The notes beneath the pieces were generated by a model. That model ran no database searches. It worked only from the letters and a program-made list of their open reading frames with translations, and was not told the origin of the DNA. This document shows, in pieces, positions 1-5,805 of a stretch of DNA of 5,972 bases. The DNA comes from Octopus sinensis. Lineage: Eukaryota. Each line of letters starts with the position of its first letter. Position 1 is the stretch's first letter. The stretch lies in assembly GCF_006345805.1 (NCBI RefSeq), contig NW_021829513.1:1-5972 (forward strand), read 5' to 3'. A program made the position numbers and the translations under genes.

Positions 1-152
1 AAGTTGTGGTGAAAGAGTACAGCAGGGATCACCCCATCCCCTGCCGGAGCCTCGTGGAGCTTAGGTGTTTCGCTCAATAAACACTCACAACGCCCGGTCT
101 GGGAATCGAAACCGCGAGTCCGCTGCCCTAACCACTGGCCTTACGCCTCCAC
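1..152 (-). mobile_element. tRNA-derived SINE, 5' part (family A); continues beyond the window edge
   Basis: Minus strand reads GTGGAGGCGTAAGGCCAGTGGTTAGG (A-box-like, 132-143), then GGTTTCGATTCC (B-box-like, 102-113), then TTGTGAGTGTTTATTGAGCGAAACACC, which resembles CORE/V-type SINE central motifs. Family name not verified. Confidence 0.8.
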
Positions 153-1049: not shown

Positions 1050-1945
1050 TCTCTAACCCAAATCATTATATTAGGTCTGCTGTGCTTACATTTTATTGAG
1101 GTTTTTCACTGGGACATTCCACCAGTACTCCTTTTTATTATAAGTGGCTAGTGGGTTCTTATTTCTTTGTCTTGGGGTTATCCTTCCGACGGATTTCATT
1201 ATAAAGTGTTCTAACTACATTATGTTTCATCGGTAGATGATACTGTGCTAACATTCTTGGACAACTGCTTATGATGTGGATGATATCTTCGGTGTTAACT
1301 CCACGAAGTGCATCGGTTGTGAAATTTTACTGCTTTTCTTTAATATCTATCCCTTTATGCATTATGTATTTGGTTGATATTTCTTGTTCCTGGATTGCAA
1401 ACGCATACCATTCAAAGTGGGGGGTAGAAATCCGACTTTTGGTTCATGATAGACCGCTTTGATAATCAATATTACTATCATCTCGGAACTTTCTACTGAC
1501 ATATCCATGCTAGTCTTCTGTTCAAATAGGCTCATCCTTTCATCTGATGATATGTTGCGGTAGAGTCGTGCGACTTCTTTGGGCATGCATTCTAGGTTAT
1601 CAGACAAGGAATGTTGCTCAAGGAGCTGCCTTCCAAATCTTATGATATTATCAGCCTCATGTATTACAAACTTGCTCAAGGGATTCACTTTGACACTTGG
1701 TGGTTAAAAGATGCTACCGAAGGGATATGATACGATATTCAAAGGCATTTTGAGTCGATGTTAAGCCTAGGTCACCTTGTTTTTGTTTTAGGTAGAGACG
1801 GTCTACGTCACTGTCTATGCGGAAATTATGCTTGTTAGTATTTTTCTGGTTTTCACATCAATAGCTCGGATCTCGTCAAGCATCCAATTAAGCAGCCCAA
1901 ATGTTGGTATGAGTACAGGCACTCGAAACAATGCCAGTACTAATA
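1050..1945 (-). mobile_element. R4/Dong-like non-LTR retrotransposon remnant: RT thumb, linker, zinc knuckle, start of endonuclease; 5'-truncated and pseudogenised
   Basis: Minus-strand peptides across several frameshifts and stops: PVLIPTFGLLNWMLDEIRAIDVKTRKILT; SDVDRLYL (1789-1812) KQKQGDLGL; HFEWYAFAIQEQEISTKY (1366-1419); EDIIHIISSCP (1258-1290); LPMKHNVVRTLY (1201-1236); EYWWNVP (1110-1130); CKHSRPNIMIW (1058-1090). Motif order matches R4/Dong ORFs. ORF 1362..1688 is one segment of this element. Confidence 0.9.
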
Positions 1946-1977
1946 CATGTATATGTATGTATGTATGTATGTATGTA
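1945..1977. repeat. (ATGT)n microsatellite
   Basis: acatgtatatgtatgtatgtatgtatgtatgta. Confidence 0.9.
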
Positions 1978-2207
1978 TTACTCTTACTCTTACTCTTTTT
2001 CTTGTTTCAGTCATTTGACTGCGGCCATGCTGGAGCACCGCCTTTAGTCGAGTAAATCGACCCCAGGATTTATTCTTTGTAAGCCTAGAACTTATTCTAT
2101 CGGTCTCTTTTGCCGAACCGCTAAGTTACAGGGACGTAAATAAACCAGCATCGGTTGTCAAGCGATGTTGGGGGACAAACACAGACACACAAACATATAC
2201 CACACAT

Positions 2208-2244
<37 letters not shown>

Positions 2245-2417
2245 ATATATATAACGACGGGCTTCTTTCAGTTTCCGTCTACCAATCCACTCCACAGGCT
2301 TTGGTCGGCCCGAGGCTATAGTAGAAGACACTTGCCCAAGGTGCCACGCAGTGGGGACGAACCCAGAACCGTGTGGCTGGTAAGCAAGCCACTTACCACA
2401 CAGCCACTCCTACGCCT
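1978..2417 (-). mobile_element. tRNA/CORE-like SINE, apparently full length (family C), with internal (AC)n/(AT)n microsatellite
   Basis: Head AGGCGTAGGAGTGGCTGTGTGG (A box 2396-2407), B-box-like GGTTCGTCCCC (2353-2363), CORE-like CACCTTGGGCAAGTGTCTT (2325-2343), internal microsatellite about 2190-2253, tail (GAGTAA)x3 at 1978-1995. A second copy lies at 4014-4286. Confidence 0.9.
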
Positions 2418-2425
2418 ATGTATGT

Positions 2426-2840
2426 TCTAAATAGTTGATACGGAAGACAGAATGTGCTGGAAACTTTATTTATCACAACGACCGTTTCGGCATAATTCTA
2501 CTCTGCGCCCTAGTTGGTGGCGAACGATATAATGAATTTCAGTGAGCTCCACAGTGCAGAAATGCCTCATCAGGTGACATAACAGGATTCCAAGTTACAT
2601 AATTGACATTTCACTCATAGGCGCATGTGATCTGGTAGGCCCGGCGGTGATGGTGGTTGATCATCTCCCGCTCGCGATATAAACACGAGAGTTCATATGC
2701 ATCACAAGCCCATATGAAAGGTTCTTTCGTGATGACTATTACAGTATTCAGTGTTCTAACTAAACACTCACTCTTAAGTGGGGATAAATATTACCTTTCG
2801 GTTGAAATACCGCTTCTGTCGCTATTAATTAGTTTTAAAA
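2426..2840 (-). mobile_element. Probable Penelope-like element terminal repeat (pLTR) remnant or retrozyme unit carrying the hammerhead; boundaries approximate
   Basis: Non-microsatellite island with a type I hammerhead followed directly by AATAAA (2465-2470), the layout known for PLE pLTRs. No convincing RT or GIY-YIG coding sequence seen. Confidence 0.45.
2471..2579 (-). ncRNA. Type I hammerhead ribozyme (predicted)
   Basis: Minus strand: stem I 5' UGUCAC (2574-2579), CUGAUGA (2567-2573), stem II GGCAU (2562-2566) ... AUGCC (2489-2493), GAAA (2485-2488), stem III within ACGGUCGU (2478-2485), H17 = U (2477), stem I 3' GUGAUA (2471-2476). All core nucleotides are present and stems I and II pair in the correct register. 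Confidence 0.82.
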
Positions 2841-2899
2841 TATTTTAACATTTTTTTTTTTACAATTCCTAATATATCTAATTACAAAAATATAATAGG

Positions 2900-2989
2900 A
2901 TATTTTAAACATGAAATGGCAATGGTGGTCCAGTAGAGTAAAATAGAAATCAAAGGGAGCCACAGGCAAAATATGGTTGAAAAACACTG
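2900..2989 (-). mobile_element. Possible single end of a hAT-like non-autonomous DNA transposon
   Basis: Minus strand begins CAGTGTTTTTCAACC (2975-2989), resembling hAT/Charlie-type CAG-start TIRs. No matching second TIR or 8-bp TSD found. Confidence 0.3.
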
Positions 2990-3016
2990 GTGCAGAAAAA
3001 CGGACGGCTAGCTTGC

Positions 3017-3035
3017 TAGATGGACAGATAGTTAG

Positions 3036-3132
<97 letters not shown>

Positions 3133-3445
3133 CTGATTGATAGATAGACAGACACACAGACAGACAGATAGATAGATAAGTAGATAGATAGGTAGATAGA
3201 TAGATAGGTAGATAGATAGATAGATAGATAGATAGAGATAGACTGATTGATAGATAGACCGACACACAGACAGACAGATATAGATAGATACGTAGATGAA
3301 TAGGTAGATAGATAGATAGGTAGATAGATAGATAGATAGATAGATATATAGATAGATAGATAGATAGATAGATGATGATAGATAGAAACACAGATAGATA
3401 GGTAGGTAAGCAGATAGATAAGTAGATAGATAGAGAGATATAGAT

Positions 3446-3514
<69 letters not shown>

Positions 3515-3546
3515 AAGAGATTGAGAGAGAGAGGGAGAGAGAGAGA
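3017..3546. repeat. Large (GATA)n array with GACA variants, ending in (GA)n
   Basis: Directly visible; source of the YLSI-repeat ORFs. Confidence 0.97.
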
Positions 3547-3771
3547 TGAAGTCAGCGACAGAAAGAGAGAAAAGAAACTGTGAGGGTGCATGGATGGGTA
3601 GATAGAGGGAAGGATGGATGAAGGAATGGAGAGGTATATCAGCTGGGTGTTAGATGGGTATGTCAGAGTAACAGGGTTACTGAGTACGGAATATGTACTT
3701 GAAGGTGTTACTCCCCTTACCGCTGTTGTTGTTATTAGTAGCGTTGTTGTTCTTGGCACCGGCCTTGTTTC

Positions 3772-3830: not shown

Positions 3831-4013
3831 TTACATCTTATTTTTAGACATAGTGTACCCATGTACCCAAGACTACCTTATCCAATTTGTCCGTCTTTTC
3901 TCTTTCTTTTTTTAAGATCACAGAGTGTATTTTATGAGAGAGTTTTCGTTGCTATTTCTAGCAGGTTGTACGACACGCACGTTGACTTATTTGCTTACTA
4001 TCATTCTTTTACG

Positions 4014-4286
4014 TGTTTCATTTATTTGACTGCGGCCATGATGGAGCACCGCCTTAAAGGGTTTTAGTCAAGGAAATGCCCCCCCCCCCGGACTTATTCT
4101 TTGTCAGCCTAGTACTGATTGTATCGGTCTCTTTTGCCGAACCGCTAAGTTACGGGGACGTAAACACACCAGCATTGGTTGTCAAGCGATGGGTGGGGGC
4201 AGACACAGACAGAAAAATACACACACACACATACATGACGGGCTTCTTTCAGTTTCACTTGCCCAAGGTGTCACGCAGTTGGACTG
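4014..4286 (-). mobile_element. Second, degraded family C SINE (head lost, internal deletion)
   Basis: Collinear with 2003-2360 (tttgactgcggccatg, atcggtctcttttgccgaaccgctaagttac, gacgggcttctttcagtttc, acttgcccaaggtg). It lacks about 54 bp relative to the first copy and stops within the B box. Confidence 0.92.
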
Positions 4287-4383
4287 GTGTGTGTGTGGTG
4301 TATGTATGTACATATGTGTATGTATGTATGTATGTATGTATGTATGTATGTATGTATGTGTGTGTGTGTGTTTATACATATAT
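4287..4383. repeat. (GT)n/(TATG)n compound microsatellite
   Basis: Directly visible. Confidence 0.92.
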
Positions 4384-4451
4384 ACGACGGGCTTCATAGA
4401 TAGATAGACATAAATATATACTTATCCTGAAAGGTGTTCAAGCTTTATCCA

Positions 4452-4600
4452 TCCTGCATCCCTCTCGTCACACATTTTGCATTTGTCGCTCTCGGTAGTG
4501 CTGTCGATTCTGCTCTACACACAGTTTGTCCTTAACGCTTGTTCTTGTGCTGCGCGCATAAATGCTTCTATCTCTATCTTCAGGTCATTCCCCCTGCTCT
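4452..4600 (-). mobile_element. Second R4/Dong-like LINE fragment (linker plus start of zinc knuckle)
   Basis: Minus-strand frame reads DLKIEIEAFMRAAQEQALRTNCV*SRIDSTTESDKCKMCDER (CKMC at 4470-4481, stop at 4515-4517). This matches the LKxETExxxxAAQEQALRT...CRxC pattern of RLE-type LINEs. Confidence 0.85.
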
Positions 4601-4603
4601 TCC

Positions 4604-4613
4604 TATTATTATC

Positions 4614-4703
<90 letters not shown>

Positions 4704-4706
4704 GTG

Positions 4707-4750
<44 letters not shown>

Positions 4751-4938
4751 TTATTATTATTATTATTATCATCGTTGTTATTATAATTTTTGTTATCATT
4801 GTTGTTGTCATTATTGTTATTATTATTGTTTTTATCATTATTGTTATTATTATTGTTGTTATTGTTATTATTCTTATTGTTGCTGTGGGTAATGGTGGTG
4901 GTGGTGGTGATGATGATAGTGTGTGTGTGTGTGTGTGT
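4604..4938. repeat. (TTA)n/(TTG)n trinucleotide array grading into (GGT)/(GAT) and (GT)n
   Basis: Directly visible; source of the poly-L/Y/I ORFs. Confidence 0.97.
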
Positions 4939-5150: not shown

Positions 5151-5466
5151 TTTGATTAGCCAGTTGTTTCGATCCTATCTCTTTATGCATAACTATTACA
5201 CTGGGTTCGTTTTAAGCAACACAGATTTGTGCAAATAGTGCCCCGTGCCAAGAGAATGCCTGCGCCAAGAGAGGACCCCTCGGACAAACTCGAGCGGGGG
5301 ACCCTATGATTAATTTTTAATATATCATTGTGGCTAAATATATGAGAGACACTAGCTTTTAAAATTTACAAAATTTGGATAAAATACCTTGCAGCATTTG
5401 TTTAGATTCTTTGCGTTCTGTTATTGACCGATGTCTAAGACTTTTTTGGACTATATCAACGGTGCG

Positions 5467-5687
5467 GAGAGAAAGAGAGAGAAAGAGAGAGAGAGAGTGG
5501 GTGAAAGAGGGAAGGAGAGAGAGAGAGAGGAGAGATATTGAAAGAAAGAGAGAGAGAGAGAGAGAGGTGAATGCATAAATGAGCAGATGGATAGATGAAT
5601 GGTTAGACAGGCAGACACAGACAGACAGAAGACAGACAGACAGAGATAGATAGATAGACAGATAGACAGATAGATAGATATATAGAT

Positions 5688-5722
<35 letters not shown>

Positions 5723-5754
5723 AAATGGATGGATATAGATACAGACAGACAGAC

Positions 5755-5805
<51 letters not shown>
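5467..5805. repeat. Compound (GA)n/(GACA)n/(GATA)n microsatellite
   Basis: Directly visible. Confidence 0.95.

What the first reader, a model, noticed from the sequence alone, without database searches (positions are those of the whole stretch)
2471..2579. Intact type I hammerhead ribozyme fold on the minus strand
Seen: CUGAUGA and GAAA cores joined by stem II GGCAU/AUGCC with the canonical G10.1-C11.1 pair. The 6 nt 5' of the core (UGUCAC) pair with the 6 nt after the predicted cleavage site (GUGAUA, one G:U). Predicted cleavage is after GUU, between 2477 and 2476. Known: type I hammerheads occur in Penelope-like elements and metazoan non-LTR retrozymes. Inference: this is a self-cleaving RNA module belonging to a retroelement. 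The GUU triplet precedes a G, so it may derive from GUC by CpG deamination, which would weaken this copy.
Basis: partly seen in the sequence, partly recalled or inferred. Interest (0 to 1): 0.88.

Follow-up and report, generated by a model that had tools for sequence, protein, structure and literature searches.

The report
Octopus hammerhead ribozyme with long arm
The flagged stretch is a real self-cleaving hammerhead RNA motif: it belongs to a repeat family in octopus genomes whose hammerheads carry an unusually long second helix. That makes it an expected kind of element in an unusual shape.

Summary
On the minus strand, 2579->2471 reads UGUCAC|CUGAUGA|GGCAU-(68 nt)-AUGCC|GAAA|C-GGUC-G|U-U^|GUGAUA. 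This is a complete type I hammerhead core with helices I, II and III, and cleavage is predicted between U2477 and G2476.

Rfam does not detect it, and the fold is no more stable than shuffled sequence. The motif is still not chance:
- My estimate is about 7e-7 chance matches per window.
- About 49 kb of other octopus DNA holds a second motif with the same design (O. bimaculoides, L002 4147-4252). It has the identical block CGAAACGGUCGUUGU and a 67-nt arm.
- Six of its ten helix I and II pairs are changed on both sides, and all still pair.
- Two more long-arm hammerhead families sit in the same sample. Across five sequences, 96% of cells pair and every helix I pair covaries.
- Twelve chance matches to the same boxes in prokaryotic and viral data have no helix I.

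In the other loci the ribozyme lies 40-50 nt upstream of a microsatellite, often in head-to-head inverted pairs. That pattern resembles Penelope-like elements, but no RT or endonuclease ORF was found. The window copy is solitary and is not part of the adjacent SINE or LINE.

GUU is shared by both copies, so the CpG-decay idea is not supported. Cleavage activity is untested.

The parts
2471..2579 (-). Complete type I hammerhead motif (helix I open, helices II and III closed)
   Evidence: Sequence. Descriptor scan finds a single hit. My covariance model of the family scores it 113.6 bits, which is by construction because it is a training sequence.
2574..2579 (-). Helix I, 5' strand UGUCAC
   Evidence: Pairs with 2476-2471, pair probabilities 0.82-0.93. 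All 5 counted helix I pairs covary across 5 octopus hammerheads.
2567..2573 (-). Core box C3-U4-G5-A6-U7-G8-A9 (CUGAUGA)
   Evidence: Sequence. Identical in the O. bimaculoides relative.
2562..2566 (-). Helix II base, 5' strand GGCAU (G10.1 = 2566)
   Evidence: Pairs with 2493-2489, probabilities 0.85-1.0. Three of 5 pairs are changed on both sides in the relative and all still pair.
2494..2561 (-). 68-nt arm that extends and closes helix II. A UU bulge (2495-2494) is followed by 6 bp, UUCUGC (2561-2556) with GUAGAA (2501-2496), then a branched distal part.
   Evidence: Constrained and free folds. The relative has a 67-nt arm of unrelated sequence (about 29% identity) that also folds as an extended stem.
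2489..2493 (-). Helix II base, 3' strand AUGCC (C11.1 = 2489)
2486..2488 (-). Core G12-A13-A14
   Evidence: Sequence. Invariant in all five octopus hammerheads aligned.
2478..2485 (-). Helix III: A15.1-U16.1 and C15.2-G16.2 closed by loop GGUC. The 8-mer ACGGUCGU is self-complementary, with G.U in the centre.
   Evidence: Sequence. The hairpin is not stable alone (0 kcal/mol), but a self-dimer of this region folds at -9.8 kcal/mol. A palindromic helix III/loop 3 is a hallmark of metazoan type I hammerheads (PMC4209133).
2476..2477 (-). Predicted scissile bond, between U17 (2477) and G1.1 (2476). The cleavage triplet is GUU.
   Evidence: Follows from hammerhead numbering applied to the sequence. 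GUU is listed among active NUH sites (PMC3138052). The same GUU occurs in the relative.
2471..2476 (-). Helix I, 3' strand GUGAUA
2424..2470 (-). About 47-nt tail downstream of the ribozyme, ending where the SINE begins at 2423. This is the probable 3' end of the repeat unit. The first 4 nt (2470-2467) can extend helix I by pairing with 2584-2581 past the bulged A2580.
   Evidence: Similarity to the tail of the O. bimaculoides copy is only borderline (local score 11 against 7.9 in shuffles, p about 0.05). This assignment is tentative.

Best explanation
The stretch is a genuine member of a family of type I hammerhead ribozymes found in octopus repeats. The window is octopus DNA. This family differs from the canonical metazoan hammerhead in that helix II is prolonged into a 60-80-nt arm.

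Predicted mechanism, when the minus strand is transcribed:
- The RNA forms the three-helix junction.
- The conserved core (CUGAUGA ... GAAA, with A15.1-U16.1) catalyses attack of the 2'-OH of U2477 on the next phosphate.
- The chain is cut between U2477 and G2476, leaving a 2',3'-cyclic phosphate and a 5'-OH.

Helix III has only 2 bp under a self-complementary tetraloop. Efficient cleavage therefore probably needs one of two things. Either two copies pair through ACGGUCGU, the dimer mode known from newt and Penelope-like-element hammerheads, or tertiary or protein help is required.

In related loci the ribozyme lies 40-50 nt from the 3' end of a short unit (about 150-170 nt). That unit abuts a microsatellite and often occurs as head-to-head inverted pairs. 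The module therefore most likely serves to process transcripts of a retroelement that is Penelope-like or depends on one. The window copy is a solitary copy of that unit.

What is shown and what is inferred:
- Shown: the motif, its pairing, its relatives and the covariation.
- Inferred: catalysis, dimer dependence and the identity of the retroelement.
For: Motif and coordinates.

Not chance:
- 0 hits in 20 Mb of random sequence.
- 3 hits in 54.7 kb of octopus DNA against 0.02 in shuffles.
- 12 chance matches to CTGATGAG-N60-90-CGAAACGGTCGTT in prokaryotic and viral collections have 0-1 helix I pairs and 1-4 helix II pairs. The octopus copies have 5-6.

Relative in O. bimaculoides (L002 4147-4252): same core, identical CGAAACGGUCGUUGU, and an arm of 67 against 68 nt.

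Covariation:
- Two sequences: 12 of 12 pairs formed in both, 6 changed on both sides, none in the slid controls.
- Five sequences from three families: 96% of cells paired, all 5 helix I pairs covary, covariation score 0.61 against 0.24 in shuffles (0 of 500 reach it) and at most 0.15 when slid.

Other points:
- Helices I and II dominate the ensemble.
- The helix III region is stable only as a dimer.
- Retroelement-like context appears in L002 and L003: inverted pairs of 147-170 nt, tails followed by (CAT)n, (ATT)n or (TA)n, and insertion into a SINE microsatellite.
- This matches published traits of Penelope-like elements: a hammerhead near the 3' end, inverted truncated partners and a microsatellite bias (PMC8557442; PMC4209133).
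Against: - No Rfam hammerhead model scores the motif, even at E<=10 on a 181-nt slice. The same is true of the more canonical octopus motif HHR-B, so this test has little power here. No positive control for those models was possible.
- The fold is not more stable than shuffles (z = 0.14).
- The free-energy minimum pairs core bases UGAU with GUCG and lies 4.9 kcal/mol below the hammerhead-constrained fold.
- Only about 49 kb of other octopus DNA could be sampled, and only one intact close relative was found.
- Similarity outside the ribozyme is borderline.
- Some relatives were found with structure-aware searches, which biases the pair counts towards pairing.
- No RT or GIY-YIG remnant, tandem repeat or inverted partner occurs in the window.
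- A long helix II may remove the loop-loop contact that makes natural hammerheads fast.
- No cleavage data exist.
Confidence: 0.78

Rival explanations
1. The family is real, but the hammerhead-shaped module no longer acts as a ribozyme, or never mainly did. On this view it serves as a structured 3' element of the repeat, for example a recognition hairpin for the reverse transcriptase, and this copy is catalytically inert.
For: - Metazoan Penelope-like-element hammerheads show little or no cleavage in vitro as monomers (PMC4209133).
- Helix III here is unstable alone.
- The long arm departs from the loop-loop design.
- The cleavage triplet is GUU rather than the commoner GUC.
- The copy is solitary, so no partner for a dimer is available in cis.
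Against: - All 11 core positions needed for catalysis are kept in two copies whose arms have diverged to about 29% identity. A mere protein-binding hairpin would not require that.
- G10.1-C11.1, C15.2-G16.2 and the palindromic loop 3 are kept as in active hammerheads.
Confidence: 0.15
2. The match is a chance resemblance: a CUGAUGA box and a GAAA box that happen to be flanked by complementary bases in repeat-rich DNA.
For: - There is no Rfam hit.
- The fold z-score is 0.14.
- With a free spacer of up to 120 nt, I estimate about 0.3 such matches per octopus-sized genome.
- The box pair with this spacing does occur by chance in very large collections.
Against: - The expectation per window is about 7e-7.
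- A second motif with identical loop 3, identical H17 and near-identical arm length, with 6 compensatory pairs, lies in a 21-kb locus chosen for other reasons.
- The chance matches elsewhere lack helix I.
- Three families share the design.
Confidence: 0.03
3. The motif belongs to one of the neighbouring elements: the tRNA-derived SINE (2423->1982) or the LINE remnant (1946->1058). The precedent would be the hammerhead-bearing Sm-alpha SINE of Schistosoma.
For: The motif ends 48 nt upstream of the SINE head, on the same strand. A LINE fragment follows on the same strand.
Against: - A SINE copy in O. sinensis aligns to window 1982-2423 only, and the flanks differ.
- Window 2380-3000 shows no significant match to the LINE's RT protein.
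- In L002 the hammerhead unit lies inside a SINE, interrupting it at its microsatellite. It is therefore an independent insertion.
Confidence: 0.02

Closest known systems
Canonical metazoan type I hammerheads of non-LTR retrozymes and satellite repeats (newt satellite 2, Schistosoma Sm-alpha, coral, mussel and axolotl retrozymes; Rfam Hammerhead_1)
   Same: - Type I topology and an identical 11-nt core.
- G10.1-C11.1 and C15.2-G16.2.
- Helix I of about 6 bp, followed by a bulge and a closing stem.
- Helix III of 2 bp under a self-complementary tetraloop, which implies dimer-assisted cleavage (PMC4209133, PMC7229834).
   Different: - Helix II here is 5 bp plus a 68-nt arm, not 4 bp plus a short loop.
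- No recognisable loop 1-loop 2 contact.
- GUU rather than GUC.
- No 150-450-bp tandem repeat in the window or in L002.
- No score from the Rfam models.
[quoted passage not shown]
   Same: - Mostly dispersed, solitary motifs.
- Pairs on opposite strands 100-700 bp apart.
- Location near the 3' end of the unit.
- Association with microsatellites.
- Longer-than-usual helix II.
- Palindromic 15.2-16.2 positions.
- High sequence diversity with covariation.
   Different: - The published minimal form lacks helix III and has an unpaired base between A9 and 10.1. This motif has a helix III with a tetraloop and no such base.
- Its helix II arm is far longer than 6-8 bp.
- No RT/GIY-YIG ORF was found next to any copy examined.
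Discontinuous or insertion-bearing hammerheads (for example the mammalian CLEC2 3'UTR hammerhead). This comparison rests on my own recollection and was not tested.
   Same: A large insertion is tolerated in one helix while the core is intact.
   Different: There the insertion is in helix I and separates the enzyme and substrate strands. Here it is a closed arm on helix II.

Membership tests
Hammerhead ribozyme (class) | Conserved core: C3 U4 G5 A6 N7 G8 A9, G12 A13 A14, A15.1-U16.1, and H17 not G | tested here: met
   All positions are present at 2573-2567, 2488-2485 and 2478-2477.
Hammerhead ribozyme (class) | Three helices around the core, supported by covariation | tested here: met
   Helices I and II have pair probabilities of 0.82-1.0. 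Six compensatory pairs occur between 2 sequences, and 7 pairs covary across 5 sequences. Helix III has 2 invariant pairs, so covariation says nothing about it.
Hammerhead ribozyme (class) | Site-specific self-cleavage that depends on the core | not testable with these tools
   Needs in vitro transcription and cleavage, or mapping of RNA ends.
Hammerhead ribozyme (class) | Score at or above the gathering threshold of an Rfam hammerhead model (Hammerhead_1, _3, _II, HH9, HH10) | tested here: not met
   No hammerhead match at gathering or at E<=10. A more canonical octopus motif also fails. I treat this as a limit of the models for long helix II, not as a defining feature. No positive control was run.
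Canonical extended type I hammerhead (fast, with tertiary contact) | Short helix II (about 4 bp) whose loop contacts an internal loop of helix I | tested here: not met
   Helix II continues into a 68-nt arm. Internal loops do occur after 5-6 bp in helix II and helix I of both copies and could substitute, but that is speculation.
Metazoan non-LTR retrozyme | Tandem repeats of 150-450 bp, each carrying one hammerhead | tested here: not met
   There is no second copy or repeat unit in the window. L002 and L003 show inverted pairs, not tandems.
Penelope-like element (pseudo-LTR hammerhead) | Hammerhead in direct repeats flanking an RT plus GIY-YIG ORF | tested here: not met
   The window has no long ORF. 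No Pfam match was found in the short ORFs tested or in the 430-750 nt upstream of the window and L002 copies. The only RT-related sequence is a LINE-type remnant. Truncated copies would not show this feature.
Penelope-like element (pseudo-LTR hammerhead) | Insertion signature: adjacent inverted truncated copy and microsatellite targets | tested here: inconclusive
   Seen in L002 and L003. Not seen in the window, apart from an (ACAT)n remnant at the tail end.
Hammerhead-bearing SINE (Sm-alpha type) | Hammerhead is an internal part of a pol III SINE | tested here: not met
   The SINE boundary at 2423 excludes the motif.

The most novel reading that the evidence does not exclude
Octopus genomes may carry a very abundant, lineage-specific superfamily of short (about 150-170 nt) retroelement units. 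Each would be built around a type I hammerhead whose helix II has grown into a 50-80-nt structured arm. At least three families (A, B and C here) appeared in about 49 kb of sampled DNA. The arm, rather than a loop-loop contact, would then be the functional partner of the ribozyme, for example as the handle for the mobilising reverse transcriptase or for circularisation. That would make these units a new kind of non-autonomous element, short like a SINE but hammerhead-bearing like a retrozyme, and a notable contributor to cephalopod repeat content and small RNAs.
Probability: 0.2. Interest if true: 0.6.

Novelty: new variant of a known kind. Interest (0 to 1): 0.45.

Why it matters
Hammerheads in animal retroelements are well known, so finding one in an octopus is expected. 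The form is what is new here.

- The core and helices I and III are canonical, but helix II carries a long arm. That arm recurs in three unrelated sequence families.
- One family has a conserved GUU cleavage triplet.
- Curated models miss all of these motifs.

If the family is as common as the small sample hints, current ribozyme surveys undercount cephalopod hammerheads. The arm would also offer a natural test of how much the loop-loop contact matters for hammerhead activity. Finally, the motif marks an unclassified short repeat that inserts at microsatellites in octopus genomes.

Tried and rejected
- Rfam scans of the window at gathering and at E<=10, and of a 181-nt slice, gave no hammerhead. 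The sub-threshold mir-297 and mir-3149 hits at 4217-4404 are microsatellite artefacts.
- Whole-motif folding gave an unremarkable z-score.
- Self-comparison of the window for a second copy, a tandem unit or an inverted partner found none.
- Three word-indexed protein searches found nothing: the ORF across the ribozyme, a SINE ORF and a LINE ORF. One search is a demonstrable false negative, because the exhaustive search found homologues with long identical words. therefore say nothing.
- Exact look-ups of five window ORFs found none on record. The window's own flanks and any orthologous loci could not be fetched.
- One metagenome scan gave a single hit in bacterial coding sequence without helices I or III, so it is chance.
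- Prokaryotic and viral scans gave 12 chance hits, which I used as a negative control.
- L009 comes from an unrelated organism.
- I rejected the idea that 2430-2960 is the upstream part of the LINE: there is no significant RT match.
- Pfam found nothing upstream of the ribozyme copies.
- Tail homology between the window copy and the L002 copies is only borderline, so I did not rely on it.

Full report
**What is there.** The minus strand from 2579 to 2471 reads UGUCAC CUGAUGA GGCAU (68 nt) AUGCC GAAA C GGUC G U U | GUGAUA. A descriptor scan of both strands finds this and nothing else in the window.

In hammerhead numbering:
- C3-A9 = 2573-2567.
- G10.1-C11.1 = 2566 and 2489.
- G12-A14 = 2488-2486.
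- A15.1-U16.1 = 2485 and 2478.
- C15.2-G16.2 = 2484 and 2479.
- Loop 3 = GGUC.
- H17 = U2477 and N1.1 = G2476.

Helix II is closed by a 68-nt arm rather than a short loop, and helix III has only two pairs.

**Tests that do not support it.**
- No Rfam family reaches its gathering score.
- No hammerhead model appears at E<=10 in the whole window or in a 181-nt slice.
- The 131-nt stretch folds no better than shuffles (z = 0.14).
- The unconstrained minimum pairs core bases UGAU with GUCG and lies 4.9 kcal/mol below the hammerhead-constrained fold.

In the ensemble, however, helices I and II have pair probabilities of 0.82-1.0. Helix III is not predicted, as expected for a 2-bp stem.

**Chance.**
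- Three descriptors gave no hit in 20 Mb of first-order Markov sequence.
- From base composition I estimate about 6e-11 matches per position and strand. That is about 7e-7 per window and about 0.3 per 2.7-Gb genome. This is my own calculation.
- The bare box pair does occur by chance in huge collections. One metagenome hit lies in bacterial coding sequence without helices I or III.
- Twelve hits to CTGATGAG-N60-90-CGAAACGGTCGTT in prokaryotic and viral contigs are about the number expected. They have 0-1 contiguous helix I pairs and 1-4 helix II pairs.

**Source and surroundings.** The window is non-coding and rich in repeats.
- An ORF at 1688->1365 has homologues. They include XP_052833275 of Octopus bimaculoides and XP_029654068 of O. 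sinensis. The latter has an RVT_1 domain upstream of the matching part.
- tblastn maps a LINE-type remnant to 1946->1058 on the minus strand.
- Fetching the loci of those proteins gave about 49 kb of octopus DNA.
- Against these loci, window 1982-2423 is a tRNA-derived SINE and 1050-1923 is the LINE. Nothing at that stringency matches 2424-3000.

The ribozyme is therefore not part of the SINE, whose head starts 48 nt downstream of it on the minus strand. It is not part of the LINE either: there is no RT similarity in 2380-3000. No second copy, tandem unit or inverted partner occurs in the window. No RT or GIY-YIG remnant lies upstream.

**The decisive result.** I scanned the fetched octopus loci with a relaxed descriptor. 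This found GUAC CUGAUGA GACCC (67 nt) GGGUC GAAAC GGUC GUU GUAC at L002 4147-4252, in O. bimaculoides. A sensitive BLAST found the same place independently (E = 0.011).
- It shares the core and the block CGAAACGGUCGUUGU (15 of 15).
- Its arm length is 67 nt against 68 nt, although the arm sequences are only about 29% identical.
- On a register-true alignment all 12 pairs form in both sequences. Six are changed on both sides, three in helix I and three in helix II. Slid controls show none.

A covariance model built from the two sequences and nhmmer then found more:
- An inverted copy with an internal deletion at L002 4003->3928, head-to-head with the intact one.
- A different type I hammerhead at L002 3595-3670 ('B'): CUGAAGA, U.U at 10.1/11.1, a 9-bp helix II with a 27-nt loop, and GAAAC ACGU GUA.
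- A third family ('C') in O. sinensis, as a head-to-head inverted pair: L003 7387->7300 and 7972-8059. The repeat is 170 nt at 84% identity. Each copy carries one disabling change.

The relaxed descriptor gives 3 hits in 54.7 kb against 0.02 in shuffles. Across the five full-length sequences:
- 96% of cells pair.
- All five helix I pairs covary.
- The covariation score is 0.61, against 0.24 in shuffles (0 of 500 reach it) and at most 0.15 when slid.

One caveat applies. Several of these motifs were found with structure-aware tools, which favours pairing, and the sample is small.

**How it most likely works.** The established hammerhead reaction would cut between U2477 and G2476.
- The helix III region is unstable as a hairpin (0 kcal/mol) but forms a -9.8 kcal/mol self-duplex.
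- A short, palindromic helix III is the published hallmark of metazoan type I hammerheads that cleave as dimers (PMC4209133; PMC7229834).
- A solitary copy such as this one is therefore expected to cleave poorly on its own.
- Both family A copies have an internal loop after 5-6 bp in helix II and in helix I. These loops could replace the usual loop-loop contact, but this is speculation.
- GUU is an accepted cleavage triplet (PMC3138052).

That does not fit: GUU is shared by both family A copies, while the three other CpGs in CGAAACGGUCG are intact in both.

**Which element.** In L002 and L003 each unit runs from 10-40 nt upstream of the ribozyme to 40-50 nt downstream of the cleavage site.
- Each unit then meets (CAT)n, (ATT)n or (TA)n.
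- The units occur as head-to-head inverted pairs.
- In L002 the cluster splits a SINE at its microsatellite.

Penelope-like elements are described with hammerheads near the 3' end, adjacent inverted truncated copies and a bias for microsatellites (PMC8557442). Most of their hammerheads are dispersed solitary motifs, or pairs on opposite strands (PMC4209133). That is the best fit.

It is not proven, because no ORF was found. The motif also differs from the published minimal form: it has a helix III and no extra base after A9. It is not a retrozyme in the defined sense, because there are no tandem units. Similarity between the window tail (2470-2424) and the L002 tail is only borderline (p about 0.05).

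**Comparison and novelty.** This is a hammerhead by core, topology and covariation. It departs from all curated models in its long helix II arm, a trait shared by three octopus families. A full-text search for 'hammerhead ribozyme' together with 'octopus' found no paper that describes hammerheads in octopus. I rate it a new variant of a known kind, of moderate interest.

**Verdict.** The qualifications are that the parent element is unidentified, the CpG idea is not supported, and activity is untested.

Noticed in passing
L002 3595-3670 (+), O. bimaculoides CM046628.1: A separate type I hammerhead ('B'): UGCGG CUGAAGA U-AGCUUUAUA-(27 nt)-UAUAAAGCU-U GAAAC ACGU GUA CCGCA. It has a U.U mismatch at 10.1/11.1, a perfectly palindromic helix III region, and a tail of about 55 nt followed by (TA)n. 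Rfam does not detect it either.
   Followed up: partly
L003 7256-7425 (-) and 7934-8103 (+), O. sinensis CM016860.1: A head-to-head inverted pair (170 nt, 84% identity) of a third long-arm hammerhead family ('C'). One copy has G.G at 10.1/11.1 and the other has G5->A. Each has a tail of about 40 nt, and (TA)n tracts lie at 6996-7103 and 8094-8112.
   Followed up: partly
L002 3889-4005 (-): An inverted copy of the family A unit lacking about 27 nt (helix II 3' strand, GAAA and helix III). It lies head-to-head with the intact copy across a spacer of about 105 nt. The whole cluster interrupts a SINE copy at its (CA)n/(TA)n tract.
   Followed up: partly
window 1058-1946 (-): A decayed LINE-type retrotransposon fragment from the region C-terminal to the RT domain. 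It is 84% identical at the DNA level to a copy in O. bimaculoides that is annotated as 'uncharacterized protein LOC106878562'.
   Followed up: yes
window 1982-2423 (-), 3994-4290 (-, 5'-truncated), 752-981, 1-150 (-): Several tRNA-derived octopus SINE copies and fragments. The 2423->1982 copy carries an internal (CA)n(TA)n tract and appears to have inserted into an (ACAT)n tract at the end of the hammerhead unit.
   Followed up: partly
window 3000-3560, 4217-4404, 4600-4900, 5460-5800: Long microsatellites: (GATA)n, (GT/ATGT)n, (ATT)n and (GA)n/(GATA)n. The sub-threshold Rfam hits to mir-297, mir-3149 and similar families at 4217-4404 are artefacts of these repeats.
   Followed up: yes
window 2464-2469 (-): An AAUAAA hexamer lies directly after helix I of the ribozyme, inside the tail. 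The L002 copy has AAAUUAAG at the same place, so the hexamer is not conserved.
   Followed up: no
tool behaviour: The word-indexed protein search returned nothing for an ORF whose homologues, sharing runs of more than 10 identical residues, were found by the exhaustive search. Negative results from the word-indexed tool on octopus repeat ORFs are therefore unreliable.
   Followed up: yes
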